Origin: Octopus bimaculoides
Lineage: Eukaryota
DNA length: 64,000 nt
Assembly: GCF_001194135.2 (NCBI RefSeq)
Contig: NC_068996.1
Location: 37,264,031-37,328,030, forward strand
Reading direction: 5' to 3'
Shown piece after piece: positions 18,784-58,830 of this stretch. Under the pieces are notes generated by a model, which saw only the letters and a list, made by a program, of their open reading frames with translations, was not told the origin of the DNA and searched no databases. The translations under genes were made by a program, and so were the position numbers. Positions within the stretch are counted from its first letter, which is position 1. The number at the start of each line of letters is the position of its first letter.

Positions 18784-19849
18784 CTGTAAAATATTAAAAA
18801 TGCAACTTAAAAAAAAAAAAAAACATATAACTGCAATTTTTTAGGAATTCTGTTAAAAAATTTATTTGGAGAAAAGACAAAAGAAATGTAAACAAAAACA
18901 GTTTTTGTTTACAACCACTTTTGTTTTCAGTGCTTGCATGGATGGGATAAATTTCTGTTTCATATTTTGTTGGAGCTTTTATTATTGTTGTTGTTGCTTA
19001 AGAACAGGTCAACCCTGATCAGATAAATGTTGCAGTCAGGACCATCCTGTTTTTTTTTTATTTCAGAAATAGTAAATCAATCCCATCTCAGTACACTAAT
19101 AGGCAATATAAATGTTGGTTGATTGGTTTGTTCAGTCATTCCTTATATCACATACACAGGAGGAGGGAGAGCAAAAAAAGAAAAAGAGGAAGAAAGAGAG
19201 ATACAGAGGGAGTTATCTTAACAGTTGCAGGATGAGTGCACATAGGTTTGATGGGAGGAGGAGGAGGAGAGGGAGTTAATGACAGAGTAGTTGCAGGGGA
19301 TTTTATACAAATGAGGAATTTGTATTTATTTAATTTTTACTTGAAGGAAATAAATATTTTTCTTTTGAAAATTAGTATTCATTTCATCATTTTGTATAGT
19401 GCCACATAAAATGCACTCAGCACACACTGCAGAGTGGCTGGCACGAAGAAAGGCATCCAGTACTAGAAGCCAAGCCAAATCAGACTGGTACTTGGTGCAG
19501 TTCTCCAGCTTGCTACCTTTAGCACTCAGCACACACAATAAAGTGGTTGGTGTTAGGAAGGGCATCCAGCTGTAGAAACCAGGCCAAGTCAGACTGGAAA
19601 ATGGAAGTTAAATGATGATGATGACACTGGTGACCAAGAAACTTGATAAAAGTTAAATTATAGTTATTGTGTGTATGCCATCATCAACATTATCATAATA
19701 ACTTCCCTGATATTTCTCCTGGTGGCAACAGTATCCTTCCAAAATTACCTATCATATGATGGATAAAAAATCCAGTTATCTAATAGTCTATGAGGCTACT
19801 AACTCTGTTGTCAACAAAGAGGTTCTCTTGCTAAGCAAAGAGTAGATTA

Positions 19850-20250
19850 TTCAATGCATGTGTACAAATTGTGATGTTGCATACAATAGTGAGATGTAGG
19901 TACTGAATGTAAAAGATGTGCAAAAGTCAGAAAGAAACAAAACAAGCATGACCCACAGAGTGAGTAATGTTAATGTGCAGGAGCAATGAGGCACAGATGA
20001 GCTGAGAGAAAAACTGCATATAAGAGAAATCAGGTGTAGCATACAACAGAGACAACTATACTGGTATGGACGCATAATGTGAGCAGATGATGACATTTGG
20101 AGGGAAAAGTACCGTAAGATTCATGTGGAACATGAAAAACCAAGGAAGAGACACAAGCAGAAGAGGTGAAAGCTGATTTCTGAAAGTTCGATTTCATGAA
20201 AGAGATGACAAAGGAATATAACTAGTGATGGAACGATGTGTTGGAGGAGA
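19850..20250 (+). mobile_element. Decayed RTE LINE, ORF 3' region
   Basis: Translates with stops and frameshifts to ACV..VML..SE.W.../ELREKLHIREIRCSIQQRQLYWYGRI. Confidence 0.65.
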
Positions 20251-51549: not shown

Positions 51550-52845
51550 ATATTTGAAATGAGAAAAATATTTTTATCATAGTGTTTTCTACAGCCTTTG
51601 TTTATCATTTTTGAAACTTGAAAAAATTTTACCTCCTTTCAGACAAATGATGATAAAGTGCCAAGTAGAAAGAAAAATGTAGCATTTTTGACATCTGCAT
51701 TCTTTTGCTTTCAATCAAGGCAATTGAAAAAGCAGCCAAAAGCTGCTTGAGACATTTGTGCTGTGTGTAGACTAAGTGCTATTACTGAAAGGACTGCACA
51801 GAAATAGTTTTCACACTTCAAACAGGGGAATTCAACCTCTCTGGTCAACCAGTTCTGTTAAGAGAGGATAGATTGAACCAGCTTATTCACAATCCATAGG
51901 GAACTGACACAGCAGATGAAGTGCTCTCACGATACCATCATCTGACACCATCACTCTATGGGTCAGGTTCAAAAACTCAGTGCATTGATTCCCTACATTC
52001 TGAATGAATGAGATGAACTCTGGCACTCCTCTATGGCCACCANNNNNNNNNNTTCTGTTAAGAGAGGATAGATTGAACCAGCTTATTCACAATCCATAGG
52101 GAACTGACACAGCAGATGAAGTGCTCTCACGATACCATCATCTGACACCATCACTCTATGGGTCAGGTTCAAAAACTCAGTGCATTGATTCCCTACATTC
52201 TGAATGAATGAGATGAACTCTGGCACTCCTCTATGGCCACCAGTTTGGTCTCTCAACACCAGTCTTCTGGGATACAAACAGAGATTTCTTTACTGTATCG
52301 TTACAGGCGATGAAAGATGGTGTCTTTGCATCAATATGAAACAGAAAAAAGAATGGGTAAGTCCCAACAAGCAAATAACACCTCCAGACAAACCAGAGGT
52401 GCATCTTCATAAAACTATGATCTGCATTTGGTGGCTAATCCACTACAAAATGCTTGGAAACAGCTGGATATTTAATGCAGAGATTTACATTCAGTGATTA
52501 AGTGATAATCTATTTGAAACTCAACCATTGTTGACATCAATGTCAACCAAGTGACATTGATGTGCTTCTTCAACATGGTAATGCTTACCCCTATGTTGCT
52601 AATTTGACCAAGAATGTCATTCAAGAGCTCAGGTTGGGAAGTTCTACACACTCACCATATTCTCCTCATATAACACTTTCTGATTATCACCTTTTTCAGT
52701 CTTTCTGCAACAATCTGCAAAGCATTTTATTCAACAACATAGAATGGAAAATGTGGCTTGATGAATTCTATCATCAAGGCATTGACAAGTTAGTGAAACA
52801 TAGGCAAGAAATGAACAATGAAAGAGAATACATTATTGACTGATT
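51550..52845 (+). mobile_element. Decayed mariner (DD34D) transposase
   Basis: RFLYCIVTGDERW...KKEWVSP...KTMICIWW, and LLQHGNAYPY...HSPYSPHITLSDYHLF; many stops and frameshifts. Confidence 0.9.
51853..52242. repeat. Exact 190-bp duplication around a 10-N gap (likely assembly overlap)
   Basis: 51853-52042 is repeated at 52053-52242. Confidence 0.85.
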
Positions 52846-53510: not shown

Positions 53511-54418
53511 GCTTAGAGAATCAGATAAATACTCTTCAGAAGATGGAAATTGATCCTTTTCCTGTCTTCTAAAGGGTATTTACCCTATTCTTAAAGCTAT
53601 CCTCACAGTCTTACTACATTCGCGAATTCTTTTATTTTCTGTGTATGTATAGTATAGGCTTGAAACATCAAAGACTTTTCCATTCTTCCTGAGCATCAAA
53701 CTAATACACCTGTTTTTTGTTCCATCACCTGCCTTCATCTTTTATTTTCTGTAAATTTGAACTATATATATATATTTGCAGTTGTACAGGCATTGTCAAT
53801 TCAAAGGAGTGTACAGCACATACATTTGATCACTATAAACATATATCAAAATAAGCAACAAGGATATCCAGAGGTAATGCAGTACGATCGTTTCAAGCGA
53901 CTCCATTTGATTGAACAATGCAACCATTACATCAATTTAAAAACAGAGCAATGCTTAGCCTGCATAAAGACATAGAATTTCATTAAATTAAAACAGATGG
54001 ACACATTAGTATAATTTTACCTAAAAACTCCAAGAAGGTAAGGAGATACACAAAGAACATGTTGTCTTCACTTCAGCTTATTTTGAAATTGTATGGATAA
54101 TACCGCACTAAATTCTGGTGCCTCAACTTAAGTACCATATTCATCTGNNNNNNNNNNNNNNNNNNNNNNNNNNNNNNNNNNNNNNNNNNNNNNNNNNNNN
54201 NNNNNNNNNNNNNNNNNNNNNNNNNNNNNNNNNNNNNNNNNNNNNNNNNNNNNNNNNNNNNNNNNNNNNNNNNNNNNNNNNNNNNNNNNNNNNNNNNNNN
54301 NNNNNNNNNNNNNNNNNNNNNNNNNNNNNNNNNNNNNNNNNNNNNNNNNNNNNNNNNNNNNNNNNNNNNNNNNNNNNNNNNNNNNNNNNNNNNNNNNNNN
54401 NNNNNNNNNNNNNNNNNN

Positions 54419-54940
54419 TGTGACAGTCCCATGAAGGGAATAATACTACTGCTATTTCGCATTAGGAAGCTTCACCGCTTCCTGTTAGCCTTGACACATT
54501 TCCTGTGTCCTTATGTTTACAAAGGGGAGACAAGCACCTCCACCCAGCTAAGCCTGCATCCAGAGACATGTTTCTGAGTCTTTGCTCATCATCATTCTGG
54601 AGTAGCAATGGCCTGCTAGTTGGAGATGCCTGTCAAGCTCTTGTAAACATATAATAATTCTACTGAAACACATTCACTAATTTCAAAAATAGAAATAATA
54701 CATTTCTAAATCTCAGAGAGATTTAAGCAGTAGTTATGCGATAAAGTAGTTGTATGCTGTCAAAGGACACAGGAAATGTGTCAAGGCCAACAGGAAGCGG
54801 TGCAGCTTCCTAGGGCTAAATAACAGTAGTATTATTCCCTTCATGGGACTGTCACATTAAGTTGACAGCATACAACTACTTTATCGCATCACTACTGCTT
54901 AAATGTATCTGAGAGATTTAGAAATGTATTATTTCTATTT
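54419..54940. repeat. Nested inverted repeats A-spacer-B-A'-B'
   Basis: A 54419-54512 vs A' 54763-54856 (6 mismatches in 93 nt); B ~54678-54762 vs B' 54861-54940. Confidence 0.9.
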
Positions 54941-55440
54941 ATATATATATATATATACACACACATAGTGTGTGTGTGTGTGTAAGATAGTACCTCCTTG
55001 TCTTAACATCACATGATAGTTGTAAATAAGAGTCACTATCATACAAGTAGTATCATTCATTTCTGGTATTCAGGGAAAATATGTCTGGCTATAGGAAAAT
55101 ATTACTTTGCTTGGAAATAGGTGAAGGCTGACAACAGGAAGGGCATCTGGTTATAGAAAGTCTATCCCAATAAATTTTGTCCAACTAATGCAAGCATGGA
55201 AAGGTGGACATTAAAACAATAACACTCATCGTCATTATCATTATTTAATATCTGTTCTCCATGCTGGCATGGCTTGGATGGTTTGACAGGAGCCAGCCAA
55301 CTGGAGCGCTGCCCAGGTTTCATTTGTATGTTTTGGCATGGTTTCTATAGTTGAATATCCTTCCCCATGCCTACAACATCACAGAGTGTGCTGGCTGCTT
55401 TTAAGCAGCAAGCTGGCAAAATGTTAGCATCTTAAACAAT

Positions 55441-55746: not shown

Positions 55747-55854
55747 AAATTAATAATTACATATATATGTATATATTTATATTAAGGAAGCAGACATATA
55801 CAGAAACACAAGAAGAAATGCAATGTTTTTCCTAGTATGTATCATGTTTTGATA

Positions 55855-57266
55855 TTATCAGGTGTGGAAGCAAGGTCTAGAATTGAAGGGCCTTAGAGTC
55901 AACCTAGCTAAAACCAAAATCCTAATAAGTAGGAAGGTAGATAAAACACAAACCCCTTCAGGTAGATGGCCCTGCTCAGTATGTAGAAAAGGAGTAGGTA
56001 GTAACTCTATAAGATGTACCCGGTGCAAGCTATGGACACATAAGAGGTGCAGCAACATCAAAGGCAGGTTAACTAGCAAGTTAGTTTTTGTTTGTGGCAG
56101 ATGTTCAGGTGCAATAAAGACTGCAAACAAACAGGAAACAACTTCTATCTCATTCCAGGGTGAAAAACTAGAGGTAGTCGATAGCTTCCGCTATCTGGGC
56201 GACCAAGTTAGTAGTGGGGGTGGGTGNNNNNNNNNNNNNNNNNNNNNNNNNNNNNNNNNNNNNNNNNNNNNNNNNNNNNNNNNNNNNNNNNNNNNNNNNN
56301 NNNNNNNNNNNNNNNNNNNNNNNNNNNNNNNNNNNNNNNNNNNNNNNNNNNNNNNNNNNNNNNNNNNNNNNNNNNNNNNNNNNNNNNNNNNNNNNNNNNN
56401 NNNNNNNNNNNNNNNNNNNNNNNNNNNNNNNNNNNNNNNNNNNNNNNNNNNNNNNNNNNNNNNNNNNNNNNNNNNNNNNNNNNNNNNNNNNNNNNNNNNN
56501 NNNNNNNNNNNNNNNNNNNNNNNNNNNNNNNNNNNNNNNNNNNNNNNNNNNNNNNNNNNNNNNNNNNNNNNNNNNNNNNNNNNNNNNNNNNNNNNNNNNN
56601 NNNNNNNNNNNNNNNNNNNNNNNNNNNNNNNNNNNNNNNNNNNNNNNNNNNNNNNNNNNNNNNNNNNNNNNNNNNNNNNNNNNNNNNNNNNNNNNNNNNN
56701 NNNNNNNNNNNNNNNNNNNNNNNNNNNNNNNNNNNNNNNNNNNNNNNNNNNNNNNNNNNNNNNNNNNNNNNNNNNNNNNNNNNNNNNNNNNNNNNNNNNN
56801 NNNNNNNNNNNNNNNNNNNNNNNNNNNNNNNNNNNNNNNNNNNNNNNNNNNNNNNNNNNNNNNNNNNNNNNNNNNNNNNNNNNNNNNNNNNNNNNNNNNN
56901 NNNNNNNNNNNNNNNNNNNNNNNNNNNNNNNNNNNNNNNNNNNNNNNNNNNNNNNNNNNNNNNNNNNNNNNNNNNNNNNNNNNNNNNNNNNNNNNNNNNN
57001 NNNNNNNNNNNNNNNNNNNNNNNNNNNNNNNNNNNNNNNNNNNNNNNNNNNNNNNNNNNNNNNNNNNNNNNNNNNNGACACGTAAAAGCACCCACTACAC
57101 TCTCTGAGTGGTTGGCGTTAGGAAGGGCATCCAGCTGTAGAAACTCTGCCAAATCAGACTGGAGCCTGGTGTTGCCATCCGGTTTCACCAGTCCTCAGTC
57201 AAATCGTCCAACCCATGCTAGCATGGAAAGCGGACGTTAAACGATGATGATGATGATGATGATCAT
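55855..57266 (+). mobile_element. 5'-truncated RTE LINE spanning an 851-N gap, ending in a family B tail
   Basis: 121 uninterrupted codons GLRVNLAKTKIL...[PHD]...EKLEVVDSFRYLGDQVSSGGG; the (gat)n tail follows the gap. Confidence 0.85.
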
Positions 57267-58339
57267 CACCATCATTTAACGTCCACTTTCCATGCTGGCC
57301 AGACTTCTGTGTCTGTTTTAAGTTATATGTATGTATATATACATATATATCTATATAGTATCCATACTTTACATGTTACATTTATTAGAAACTGTAAAGT
57401 GACAAAGCAGCAGAGCTGTTGGAGCATCAAACAGAATGCATTGTGGTAATCATTCTCACCTTCTGTACTCCGAGATCAACTTTACCTTTCATCTTTTTGG
57501 GTAATTCAATAAATAAAACACCAGTCAAAGTGGTGGGTTGGTGGCATTGTTAGGCTACTGGAGAAGATATCTTATACTATTCATTCTGAATCCAAATTCT
57601 CCCTCCTATCACAAACCTATTTATAGAAGGAAATGTGCCCTTCAAGACCCAGAATATGATGACAGATATCCTAGACTGGGACTATATAGTTGAAAGTGCC
57701 CCTCCTATTTCTCGATTTGTACCCTGGGCAGAGATTGTTGGTACTCAAAGGTCAGCACTCAATGAACAGACCAATGATAAACAGTATTCCAGCCATGACA
57801 TTCTCATCTTATTGTATATCAGAAAGATTATTATCAGATATTTCCTTCTTTTCTGTAATGTGGTAAGATGTTTGAGATTGTTTTCACTGCTAATTCTAAC
57901 AGGTCAAGTAACCATTTGTAAGTACCTTTAAACAATAACATTCAATTAATGCTATATTATAGCACTAATATCAATGCTTATTTCTCTAATCATAATTAAT
58001 ATTCTTTATATTCTCAGTATTCAATTTTGAGGTTCTGGTACTCTGTTATATTTTATTCCAAGAGGCCAACAGTAATATATTCTTTCTTTGCAATATTCTT
58101 ATAGCCATCTAAGTAAATACACCCCAAAATATTGCGGTTGTATTGTTGTCATATAACAAATCAGGGTTAATACCACTTATATTTTTTATGGTAGAGGTAT
58201 AGCTGTTGGAAGAAGACGAAGTCTACTTCACAAACCAGGTGGTTCCAGGTTTGGTCCCACTGCACAGCACCTTGGGTTAAAGTGTTCTACCATGGACTCA
58301 GGATGGCTAGTGCCTTGTGATTGAAATTTGATAAATAGT

Positions 58340-58830
58340 AACTATATGGAATCCCACTGAAGATGTGTGTGTGCGCATATGCACAATAACACAAAGGGCC
58401 TCTCCTTCAGAGTGAAAGGTAGACTATATGATGCTTGTGTATGAACAGCAATGTTACAGGATAATGAAATGTGGGCTGTAGATGCAAGCGACATGTGAAG
58501 GCTCAAAAGAAATGAAGCAGGCATACTCTGCTGGATGTGCAATGGCAGTGCGCATGTAAGACAAAGTGTAAATGCATGTGAAAGATTAGGCATAAGAGGC
58601 AGCAGATGTAGTGTGTGAGAGAGAAGACTGCACTGGAATGGTCATGTGAGACATATGGATAAGGACAGGTTCATAAAGACGTTTTATTCCCTTAATGTGG
58701 ACGGAACCTGTGGAAGAAGGAGAACAAGGAGGATGTGGAATAAAGTGGTGAAAAATGACATTCTGATGTTGAGCCTCACAGAGATGACAAAGGACTAACA
58801 TGATTGGCCATCTGTTGTGCTTGAGGAGAC
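58340..58830 (+). mobile_element. Decayed RTE LINE, ORF 3' region
   Basis: RVKGRLYDACV*TAML..E.W / RLKRNEAGIL.WMC / RRLHWNGHVRHM / GTCGRRRTRRMW. Confidence 0.85.

What the first reader, a model, noticed from the sequence alone, without database searches (positions are those of the whole stretch)
55973..56104. PHD finger inserted inside an RTE reverse transcriptase, before the thumb
Seen: between the last RT palm motif (GLRVNLAKTKIL) and the thumb motif (LEVVDSFRYLG) sits C-x2-C-x10-C-x2-C-x4-H-x2-C-x14-C-x2-C with the PHD-typical W before the His, in 121 stop-free codons. Established: this linker is normally about 20 aa, and PHD fingers in LINEs are best known from ORF1 of CR1/L2-type elements. 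Inference: this lineage has a possible histone-reader module fused into ORF2, which could steer integration by chromatin state. The intact frame suggests a young family. The architecture may already exist in repeat libraries.
Basis: partly seen in the sequence, partly recalled or inferred. Interest (0 to 1): 0.7.

Follow-up and report, generated by a model that had tools for sequence, protein, structure and literature searches.

The report
PHD zinc finger inside RTE transposon
A dead octopus copy of an RTE-type jumping gene carries a PHD zinc finger inside its reverse transcriptase. The finger belongs to a widespread, strongly conserved animal lineage of such elements and may dock the enzyme onto chromatin, which is untested.

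Summary
Window 55973-56104 encodes C-x2-C-x10-C-x2-C-x4-H-x2-C-x14-C-x2-C. It passes Pfam's PHD threshold, and its AlphaFold model matches only PHD fingers in the PDB.

The finger lies between RT motif 6 (GLRVNLAKTK) and motif 7, the primer grip (FRYLG), just before the thumb.

It is not peculiar to this copy. More than 70 intact proteins of about 1000 aa have the layout APE endonuclease, RT, PHD, thumb. All carry the insert, with 93-104 aa between the two motifs, against 33-41 aa in the nearest relatives without a PHD. They form one clade. The finger is as conserved as the RT core (pN/pS about 0.1).

Full-length relatives show RTE hallmarks: a single ORF, no C-terminal CCHC, and a tiny 3' UTR ending in pentanucleotide repeats. 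Named hosts include octopus, krill and hagfish.

The window copy is dead. It is 5'-truncated, broken by an assembly gap and unrelated DNA, and has three in-frame stops downstream, so "young family" is not supported here.

Function is inferred. The hydrophobic half of a Pygopus/TAF3-type H3K4me pocket is conserved. The acidic residues are missing and the finger is strongly basic, so DNA or RNA binding next to the primer grip is a serious rival. I rate it a new variant of a known kind.

The parts
55853..56226 (+). 5'-truncated ORF fragment of an RTE-type LINE: end of the RT palm, the PHD insert and motif 7. Homology to other copies starts just after a stop at 55850-55852.
   Evidence: Translation. 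tblastn of octopus copies and full-length relatives: P0185 residues 759-878 match here.
55889..55924 (+). RT motif 6 region, GLRVNLAKTKIL
   Evidence: Aligned with GLxVNxxKTK of all full-length relatives.
55967..55972 (+). Conserved aromatic-Pro (W36-P37) just before Cys1. It aligns with Y341-P342 of Pygopus and W868 of TAF3.
   Evidence: Y, F or W in 162 of 181 sequences and P in 171 of 181. HMM alignments. Pocket role from PMC2726290.
55973..56104 (+). PHD finger core, C4HC3 (C38, C41, C52, C55, H60, C63, C78, C81), with W58 before the His.
   Evidence: Pfam PF00628 at 28.3 bits, above the cut-off of 24. AlphaFold model pLDDT 87. The Foldseek top 50 are all PHD fingers.
56168..56200 (+). LEVVDSFRYLG: beta strands leading into RT motif 7 (primer grip, FxYLG).
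   Evidence: F109, Y111, L112 and G113 are invariant in A6. Primer grip and thumb order from PMC10830420.
56227..57076 (.). Assembly gap of 850 N. About 23 codons of the element (P0185 residues 879-901) are missing here.
57077..58387 (.). Sequence unrelated to the LINE, lying between its two halves. It includes a dispersed SINE-like repeat with a 41-nt hairpin (57120-57306). This is either an insertion into the element or a scaffold join.
   Evidence: No tblastn match. Repeat copies at 55136-55275 and 57120-57306.
58388..58798 (+). Thumb and C-terminal tail of the same element (...VDGTCGRRRTRRMW...). It has three in-frame stops (58442-58444, 58496-58498, 58616-58618) before the natural stop at 58796-58798.
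   Evidence: tblastn: P0197 residues 944-1086 and P0007 residues 146-196. Translation.

Best explanation
Shown: the finding is a decayed, 5'-truncated copy of an RTE-clade LINE. Its single ORF belongs to a large monophyletic sublineage in which a PHD-type zinc finger of about 45 aa, with two variable linkers (about 62-65 aa in all), was inserted once. The insertion point is the hairpin loop between RT motif 6 and motif 7 (the primer grip), and the finger has since been kept under purifying selection as strong as that on the RT core. Inferred: the finger is a target-docking module. The primer grip holds the nicked target-DNA 3' end during target-primed reverse transcription. A finger next to it would tether the ribonucleoprotein to the chromatin being invaded, most likely through a Pygopus/TAF3-like pocket for the histone H3 tail (methylated K4), probably helped by its basic surface touching nucleosomal DNA. 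This would bias or stabilise integration. I put identity and architecture at about 0.95 and the chromatin-docking mechanism at about 0.4-0.45.
For: PHD identity:
- Pfam score above the cut-off, and 40 of 40 diverse family members hit PF00628.
- AlphaFold model of the window fragment has pLDDT 87. All top 50 Foldseek PDB matches are PHD fingers, and TAF3 superposes at 1.9-2.0 A over 47 columns.

Family-wide presence and single gain:
- A profile search found 8105 clusters at E<1e-3 and 2427 at E<1e-10.
- Every full-length member has the C4HC3 pattern and 93-104 aa between motifs 6 and 7. Relatives without a PHD have 33-41 aa.
- The 71 PHD-bearing proteins form one clade in an NJ tree built on 928 non-PHD columns.

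Selection:
- PHD core mean pairwise identity is 0.55, against 0.56 for the RT core and 0.46 for APE. The flanking linkers are at 0.26 and 0.12.
- pN 0.072 and pS 0.75 in the PHD, similar to the RT.

RTE assignment:
- Single ORF with APE and RVT_1 and no other domain.
- The full-length model is closest to L1 ORF2p and R2.
- The 3' UTRs are a few tens of nt and end in (AAGTA)n or (ACTAA)n.
- The nearest relatives without a PHD come from a nematode and plants.

Reader signature:
- The best PDB sequence matches are H3K4me readers: Pygo1/2 at 1e-8, then PHF23, PHF13, BPTF, TAF3.
- Pygo pocket residues Y341, W366, V350 and A356 (PMC2726290) align with the conserved aromatic, W, V and S. TAF3 W868 and W891 align with W36 and W58.

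Position:
- The primer grip anchors the primer and is followed by the thumb (PMC10830420).
Against: - No binding or insertion-site data exist. The fold and the full-length structure are predictions, and I could not inspect coordinates, so I do not know whether the H3-binding groove is exposed or packed against the RT.
- The acidic residues that hold H3 K4/R2/A1 in Pygo (D352, E360) and the position aligned with an acidic TAF3 residue are S/V/R/A and T/S/N here.
- The finger is strongly basic, net +1 to +11 with a mean of +5.7, against -6 for TAF3 and Pygo. That is unusual for a reader of the very basic H3 tail.
- A Trp before the His is common in PHD fingers generally.
- The sequence neighbours that lack the finger include full-length ORFs in several genomes, so the finger appears to be an accessory, not a necessity.
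- The RTE assignment was not tested against named reference RTs.
Confidence: 0.45

Rival explanations
1. The finger is a nucleic-acid clamp or structural zinc module with no role in reading chromatin. Being basic and next to the primer grip, it would grip the target-DNA primer strand, the RNA template or the cDNA/RNA duplex. It might do the job of the C-terminal CCHC/zinc-knuckle region that other LINE clades have and RTE lacks.
For: - Net charge +1 to +11 in all 40 diverse members.
- The acidic H3-gripping residues are absent.
- The insertion point is directly before the primer grip.
- No C-terminal Cys-rich domain appears in the family.
- The finger is confidently modelled within the full-length model (pLDDT 91-95, pTM 0.84), which is compatible with a fixed position on the RT.
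Against: - Its closest sequence and structure relatives are histone-tail readers, not nucleic-acid-binding fingers.
- The hydrophobic pocket residues (aromatic, W, V, S) are conserved beyond what zinc binding alone would require.
- The linkers on both sides are highly variable, which suits a tethered module better than a precisely placed clamp.
Confidence: 0.3
2. The finger is a protein-protein adaptor. It would recruit a host factor such as a replication, repair or import factor, or mediate self-association of the ORF protein, as Pygopus PHD also binds BCL9 on its other face.
For: - The best PDB profile match is Pygopus PHD, which uses a second surface for BCL9 HD1 (PMC2726290).
- PHD fingers are versatile interaction modules (general knowledge).
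Against: - The Pygo-specific EVND motif and loop are absent.
- Nothing in the data points to a partner.
Confidence: 0.12
3. The finger is a passenger: a captured host exon or a relic with no current function. Alternatively it is a chimera or assembly artefact peculiar to this locus.
For: - The window copy is dead and lies next to an assembly gap.
Against: - The same insert sits at the same position in thousands of sequences from several phyla.
- All zinc ligands are kept.
- Conservation equals that of the RT core, and pN/pS is about 0.1.
Confidence: 0.03

Closest known systems
RTE-clade LINEs (RTE-1 of C. elegans, BovB, Rex3; octopus RTE-2_OV of PMC9115989)
   Same: - Single ORF of about 1000 aa with an N-terminal APE endonuclease and an RT.
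- No C-terminal CCHC or RNase H.
- C-terminal ...RLRWFGHV...GRPxKTW... tail.
- 3' UTR of a few tens of nt ending in short tandem repeats.
- 5'-truncated copies.
   Different: - A PHD insert of about 65 aa lies between RT motifs 6 and 7.
- The nearest relatives found here that lack it have only 33-41 aa between the motifs.
- The RTE-2_OV paper reports a 'C2H2 zinc finger, relatively rare in RTE elements'. I could not obtain that sequence, so whether it is the same finger is unknown.
PHD fingers of CR1/L2/Crack LINEs (ORF1p types II and III, or the N-terminus of ORF2p)
   Same: - A PHD finger carried by an APE-type LINE.
- Its function has never been tested experimentally (PMC4120745; PMC3708506).
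   Different: - Those fingers lie in ORF1 or upstream of the APE domain as terminal modules.
- This one is internal to the RT palm, in a different LINE group (RTE rather than Jockey/CR1/L2).
Pygopus and TAF3 PHD fingers (H3K4me2/3 readers)
   Same: - C4HC3 fold.
- YPCGxC-type start.
- Trp before the His.
- Val and a small residue at the pocket floor.
- An [A/S]-I-x-C beta strand that pairs with the H3 tail.
   Different: - No EVND motif or Pygo loop.
- No acidic lip residues (D352, E360).
- Net charge +1 to +11 instead of -6.
- Embedded in an enzyme rather than in a chromatin cofactor.
Chromodomain of chromovirus (Ty3/gypsy) integrases
   Same: This is a functional analogy only. It is a histone-mark reader fused to a retroelement's integration enzyme that directs insertion to particular chromatin (my own knowledge, not tested here).
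   Different: - Different fold, different element class (LTR) and different enzyme (integrase).
- Targeting has been shown experimentally for chromoviruses, not for this element.

Membership tests
PHD finger (Pfam PF00628) | C4HC3 ligand pattern with canonical spacing | tested here: met
   C-x2-C-x10-C-x2-C-x4-H-x2-C-x14-C-x2-C at 55973-56104. All eight ligands are at least 90% conserved in 93 sequences.
PHD finger (Pfam PF00628) | Score above Pfam's gathering threshold | tested here: met
   28.3 bits against a cut-off of 24. 40 of 40 diverse family members match at E up to 0.01, best 8e-9. Several full-length relatives score just below the cut-off (18-25 bits).
PHD finger (Pfam PF00628) | PHD fold (interleaved zinc sites, small beta sheet) | tested here: met
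   Prediction only. AlphaFold pLDDT 87. Top 50 Foldseek PDB matches are all PHD fingers. TAF3 rmsd 1.9-2.0 A, TM normalised to target 0.63. E-values are weak (at least 0.04), as expected for a domain of about 50 aa.
PHD finger (Pfam PF00628) | Binds two zinc ions | not testable with these tools
   Needs metal analysis of purified protein.
H3K4me-reading PHD fingers (Pygo, TAF3, BPTF, ING class) | Aromatic or hydrophobic pocket for methyl-lysine | tested here: met
   The aromatic two residues before Cys1 (162 of 181) aligns with Pygo Y341 and TAF3 W868. The Trp before His (177 of 181) aligns with Pygo W366 and TAF3 W891. Val (175 of 181) and Ser (170 of 181) align with V350 and A356. These are alignment-based equivalences.
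H3K4me-reading PHD fingers (Pygo, TAF3, BPTF, ING class) | Acidic residues or surface that hold H3 K4/R2/A1 | tested here: not met
   Positions aligned with Pygo D352 and E360 are S/V/R/A and T/S/N. Net charge is +1 to +11, against -6 for the readers.
H3K4me-reading PHD fingers (Pygo, TAF3, BPTF, ING class) | Measured binding to H3 tail peptides | not testable with these tools
   Needs a peptide array, ITC or NMR.
RTE-clade LINE | Single ORF with an N-terminal APE endonuclease followed by an RT | tested here: met
   Met in full-length relatives: Exo_endo_phos plus RVT_1 in proteins of 1004-1042 aa, with one called gene per contig of 3.3-3.9 kb. The window copy itself is truncated and shows only the last 300 aa or so.
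RTE-clade LINE | No C-terminal CCHC zinc knuckle and no RNase H | tested here: met
   No further Pfam domain. The family consensus after the thumb has no Cys-rich motif.
RTE-clade LINE | Very short 3' UTR ending in short tandem repeats rather than poly(A) | tested here: met
   In seven relatives' contigs the shared sequence ends a few tens of nt after the stop codon in (AAGTA)n or (ACTAA)n, after which the sequences diverge. The 3' end of the window copy was not defined.
RTE-clade LINE | RT groups with reference RTE elements in a phylogeny | tested here: inconclusive
   No named reference RTs were available. The nearest neighbours without a PHD are from Necator americanus and plants, which is compatible with RTE but not proof. 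RTclass1 or Repbase classification is needed.
CR1/L2-type LINE PHD (ORF1p or N-terminus of ORF2p) | PHD located in ORF1 or upstream of the APE domain | tested here: not met
   The PHD lies between RT motifs 6 and 7, about 700-850 aa into the single ORF.

The most novel reading that the evidence does not exclude
The finger is a working histone-H3-tail (K4-methyl) reader built into the polymerase itself, next to the primer grip. This RTE sublineage would then choose or stabilise its integration sites by chromatin state. That would be the first LINE with a reader domain inside its RT, possibly captured from a Pygopus-like host gene, and a natural template for chromatin-directed retrotransposon tools.
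Probability: 0.3. Interest if true: 0.75.

Novelty: new variant of a known kind. Interest (0 to 1): 0.5.

Why it matters
How APE-type LINEs pick insertion sites beyond a short nicking motif is largely unknown, and no LINE PHD finger has been studied functionally (PMC4120745). This case offers a clean system:
- an accessory reader-type domain sits inside the RT of an otherwise minimal, single-ORF element;
- it has been conserved as tightly as the catalytic core across molluscs, crustaceans and jawless vertebrates;
- intact ORFs are available to clone.

If the finger reads histone marks, it links retrotransposition directly to chromatin state. If it binds nucleic acid, it shows how a minimal RTE makes up for lacking the C-terminal zinc domain of other LINEs. 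For the octopus, where RTE activity in the brain has been proposed (PMC9115989), it bears on where new copies can land. The window locus itself is only a dead fragment. The value lies in the family.

Tried and rejected
- Literature: nine searches, seven of which looked for a PHD finger inside an RTE ORF2, and found none. One of those seven (RTEX plus PHD) returned only irrelevant papers. This is absence in the open-access set, not proof of novelty.
- Octopus RTE-2_OV: I searched the paper's supplements for its protein sequence to see whether its 'C2H2 zinc finger' is this PHD. The sequence is not held.
- Shrimp non-LTR paper (PMC3849965): its only 'PHD' hit was a grant number.
- Other zinc-finger families: C1, RING, ZZ and MYND all scored below their Pfam cut-offs and below PHD, and the structure search returned only PHD fingers. 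Rejected.
- Chance pattern or locus-specific chimera: rejected by family-wide conservation.
- Organism names: I tried to get them for the intact full-length proteins. Nearly all come from unnamed marine metagenome contigs such as Tara Oceans PRJEB4352.
- dN/dS: synonymous sites in the six-sequence set are close to saturation (pS 0.56-0.75, and dS defined for only 6 of 15 pairs in the PHD). I therefore report pN/pS and treat the ratio as rough.
- Geometry: the structure tool returns no coordinates, so the position of the finger relative to the nucleic-acid cleft could not be measured.

Full report
**1. What is in the window**

The + strand frame starting at 55862 is open for 121 codons. It ends only because an assembly gap of 850 N begins at 56227. 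It reads ...GLRVNLAKTKIL-ISRKVDKTQTPSGRWP-CSVCRKGVGSNSIRCTRCKLWTHKRCSNIKGRLTSKLVFVCGRC-SGAIKTANKQETTSISFQGEK-LEVVDSFRYLG...

Pfam's PHD model scores 28.3 bits (cut-off 24, E = 1.8e-6). C1, RING, ZZ and MYND models all score below their cut-offs.

The window is cephalopod DNA. The closest proteins are UniRef entries from Octopus bimaculoides, one of them already auto-labelled 'Zinc finger PHD-type domain-containing protein' with PF00078 plus PF00628.

**2. State of this copy**

- Homology to other copies begins at about 55853, right after a stop codon and a (TA)n/(CA)n microsatellite block. The copy is therefore 5'-truncated at about residue 757 of an ORF of about 1060 aa.
- After the gap come 1.3 kb with no similarity to the element. 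This stretch includes a dispersed SINE-like repeat with a 41-nt hairpin, which also occurs upstream at 55136-55275.
- The element resumes at 58388 and runs to its natural stop at 58796-58798, in one frame but with three premature stops.
- The copy is dead. The short open stretch says nothing about the age of the family.
- Other octopus copies that cover the whole fragment are 72-87% identical at the protein level. One partial copy is 95% identical.

**3. The insert is a family feature**

- A profile of 14 fragments found 8105 clusters at 50% identity with E<1e-3, 2427 with E<1e-10 and 276 with E<1e-30.
- Full-length members are 1000-1120 aa and have Exo_endo_phos (APE), RVT_1 and PHD, in that order.
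- In every one of more than 70 full-length members the distance from GLxVN (motif 6) to FxYLG (motif 7) is 93-104 aa and contains a C4HC3 pattern.
- The next-best hits come after a clear score drop (857 to 692 bits). They include proteins of the nematode Necator americanus and of plants. They have 33-41 aa between the motifs and no Cys pattern.
- The alignment shows a clean insertion into the loop of the hairpin that follows motif 6.
- In a neighbour-joining tree built on 928 columns that exclude the insert, the 71 PHD-bearing proteins form one clade with no PHD-less sequence inside it. There is no bootstrap support for this tree. A single gain is the simplest reading.
- Named sources of PHD-bearing fragments are Octopus bimaculoides, the hagfish Myxine glutinosa, the krill Meganyctiphanes norvegica and an Acanthocheilonema viteae assembly. 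Most intact ORFs come from unnamed marine metagenome contigs such as Tara Oceans.

**4. Selection on the finger**

- In an alignment that was not selected for the Cys pattern (93 sequences, including decayed octopus fragments), all eight ligands are at least 90% conserved. So are P37, G44, V45, G46, N48, S49, W58 and S64.
- Among the full-length members the PHD core has a mean pairwise identity of 0.55. The RT fingers/palm has 0.56, the APE 0.46, and the two flanking linkers 0.26 and 0.12. This is the pattern of an independently folding module on variable tethers.
- In six related elements with DNA in hand, pN is 0.072 and pS 0.75 in the finger (0.084 and 0.69 in the RT). Synonymous sites are near saturation, so the ratio of about 0.1 is rough, but purifying selection is clear.

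**5. Fold**

- AlphaFold2 on the window's own 122 residues, with 93 aligned sequences, gives pLDDT 87.
- Foldseek against the PDB returns only PHD fingers in the top 50: ARID5, AIRE, BAZ2A, TAF3, BPTF, ING4/5, BHC80 and others. TAF3 superposes at 1.9-2.0 A over 47 columns. The E-values are weak (at least 0.04), as expected for such a small domain.
- The closest full-length relative (P0185, 1060 aa) is modelled with pLDDT 89.7 and pTM 0.84, including the finger at 91-95.
- Its best PDB matches are human LINE-1 ORF2p (E = 2.8e-38) and R2 proteins.
- The secondary structure places the finger after the long strand of motif 6 and before four short strands that lead to FxYLG and the thumb helices.

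**6. Which LINE clade**

Full-length relatives have these features:
- one ORF, with the APE domain at the very N-terminus;
- no C-terminal Cys-rich or RNase H domain;
- a tail ...RLRWFGHV...GxRxRGRPxKTW...DRxxWR, which from my own knowledge resembles the BovB/RTE tail;
- shared sequence that ends a few tens of nt after the stop codon in (AAGTA)n or (ACTAA)n, after which the contigs diverge.

These are RTE hallmarks. I could not place the RT in a tree with named reference elements, so the clade call rests on architecture and neighbours.

**7. How it may work**

FxYLG is RT motif 7, the primer grip. In LINE-1 ORF2p the primer grip anchors the proximal primer and is followed by the thumb (PMC10830420). 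During target-primed reverse transcription the primer is the nicked target DNA. The finger is therefore placed, in sequence terms, next to the part of the enzyme that holds the target.

Evidence for reading the histone H3 tail:
- The best solved relatives by sequence are H3K4me readers: Pygopus 1/2 at E about 1e-8 with the family profile, then PHF23, PHF13, BPTF, PHF2, KDM5B and TAF3.
- In human Pygo1 the K4me2 pocket has walls W366, Y341 and D352 and floor V350 and A356. Strand A356-L358 pairs with the H3 tail, and W366E abolishes binding (PMC2726290).
- In the HMM alignment these positions correspond to the family's conserved Trp (177 of 181), aromatic (Y/F/W, 162 of 181), Val (175 of 181), Ser (170 of 181) and the S-I-x strand. 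D352 and E360 correspond to non-acidic, variable residues.
- The two TAF3 tryptophans (positions 19 and 42 of chain 2k16_A; W868 and W891 by my recollection of the published numbering) align with W36 and W58 of the window sequence.

Evidence against:
- The finger carries a net charge of +1 to +11 (mean +5.7, and +11 in the window copy), against -6 for TAF3 and Pygo and +3 for PHF13.
- This is odd for a module that binds a very basic peptide. It fits DNA or RNA binding.

My best reading is a target-chromatin docking module (H3 tail pocket plus a basic surface), at about 0.4-0.45. A pure nucleic-acid clamp or structural role is at about 0.3, a protein adaptor at about 0.1, and a functionless passenger is essentially excluded.

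**8. Comparison with what is known**

- PHD fingers are well documented in ORF1p, or at the N-terminus of ORF2p, of CR1, L2 and Crack elements. They have not been tested functionally (PMC4120745, PMC3708506).
- I found no paper describing a PHD inside the RT of an RTE element.
- The octopus RTE-2_OV paper mentions a 'C2H2 zinc finger, relatively rare in RTE elements' without giving a position I could check.
- The domain pair is already visible in automatic annotations. Given how abundant the family is, it is very likely present in repeat libraries.
- I therefore rate it a new variant of a known kind: a real, old and conserved architecture that seems not to have been examined, seen here through a dead copy.

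**9. Verdict**

- Observation: confirmed.
- Interpretation: partly supported. The architecture and conservation hold, the 'young family' inference does not, and the histone-reader function is plausible but unproven.
- Interest: moderate, 0.5.

Noticed in passing
window 52204-52497 (+), probably extending to about 52843: Fragment of a mariner-type transposase. Pfam Transposase_1 (PF01359) scores 32.4 bits against a cut-off of 24. The neighbouring ORF at 52562-52843 reads ...SPYSPHITLSDYHLF..., which looks like the mariner C-terminal region in another frame but gave no Pfam hit.
   Followed up: partly
window 55136-55275 and 57120-57306: Two direct copies (73-88% identical in pieces) of a dispersed SINE-like repeat. 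The second has a near-perfect 41-nt inverted repeat (57217-57299) around a (GAT)n run and sits between the two halves of the LINE copy.
   Followed up: partly
window 19796-20139 (+): Weak tblastn matches (25-38% identity) to the thumb and C-terminal region of the same kind of RTE-type ORF. Probably another, older LINE fragment.
   Followed up: no
window 51883-52026 and 52083-52277 (-): Two adjacent minus-strand ORFs end in the same 45-aa sequence (PEFISFIQNVGNQCTEFLNLTHRVMVSDDGIVRALHLLCQFPMDCE). This indicates a local tandem duplication of about 200 bp next to the mariner fragment.
   Followed up: no
window about 54150-54420 and 56227-57076: Two runs of N (assembly gaps) lie within 3 kb of each other. 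The local assembly around the finding is fragmented, so the order of the two LINE halves and the intervening 1.3 kb may not be reliable.
   Followed up: no
loci L003-L008 (relatives' contigs), first 20-40 nt after the stop codon: Six related elements share a 3' end ...ATGGAAAAGTAAAGTAAAGTAAGT, that is (AAGTA)n, and L002 ends in (ACTAA)n. L005 also has an upstream 122-aa ORF that overlaps the start of the main ORF, possibly a short ORF1.
   Followed up: partly
family-wide (alignment A5): The family's PHD profile matches Pygopus PHD fingers best (E about 1e-8, with a shared YPCG[VI]C start), and many members carry precomputed weak PHD_Pygo (PF27108) hits. This may hint that the finger was captured from a Pygopus-like host gene.
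   Followed up: no
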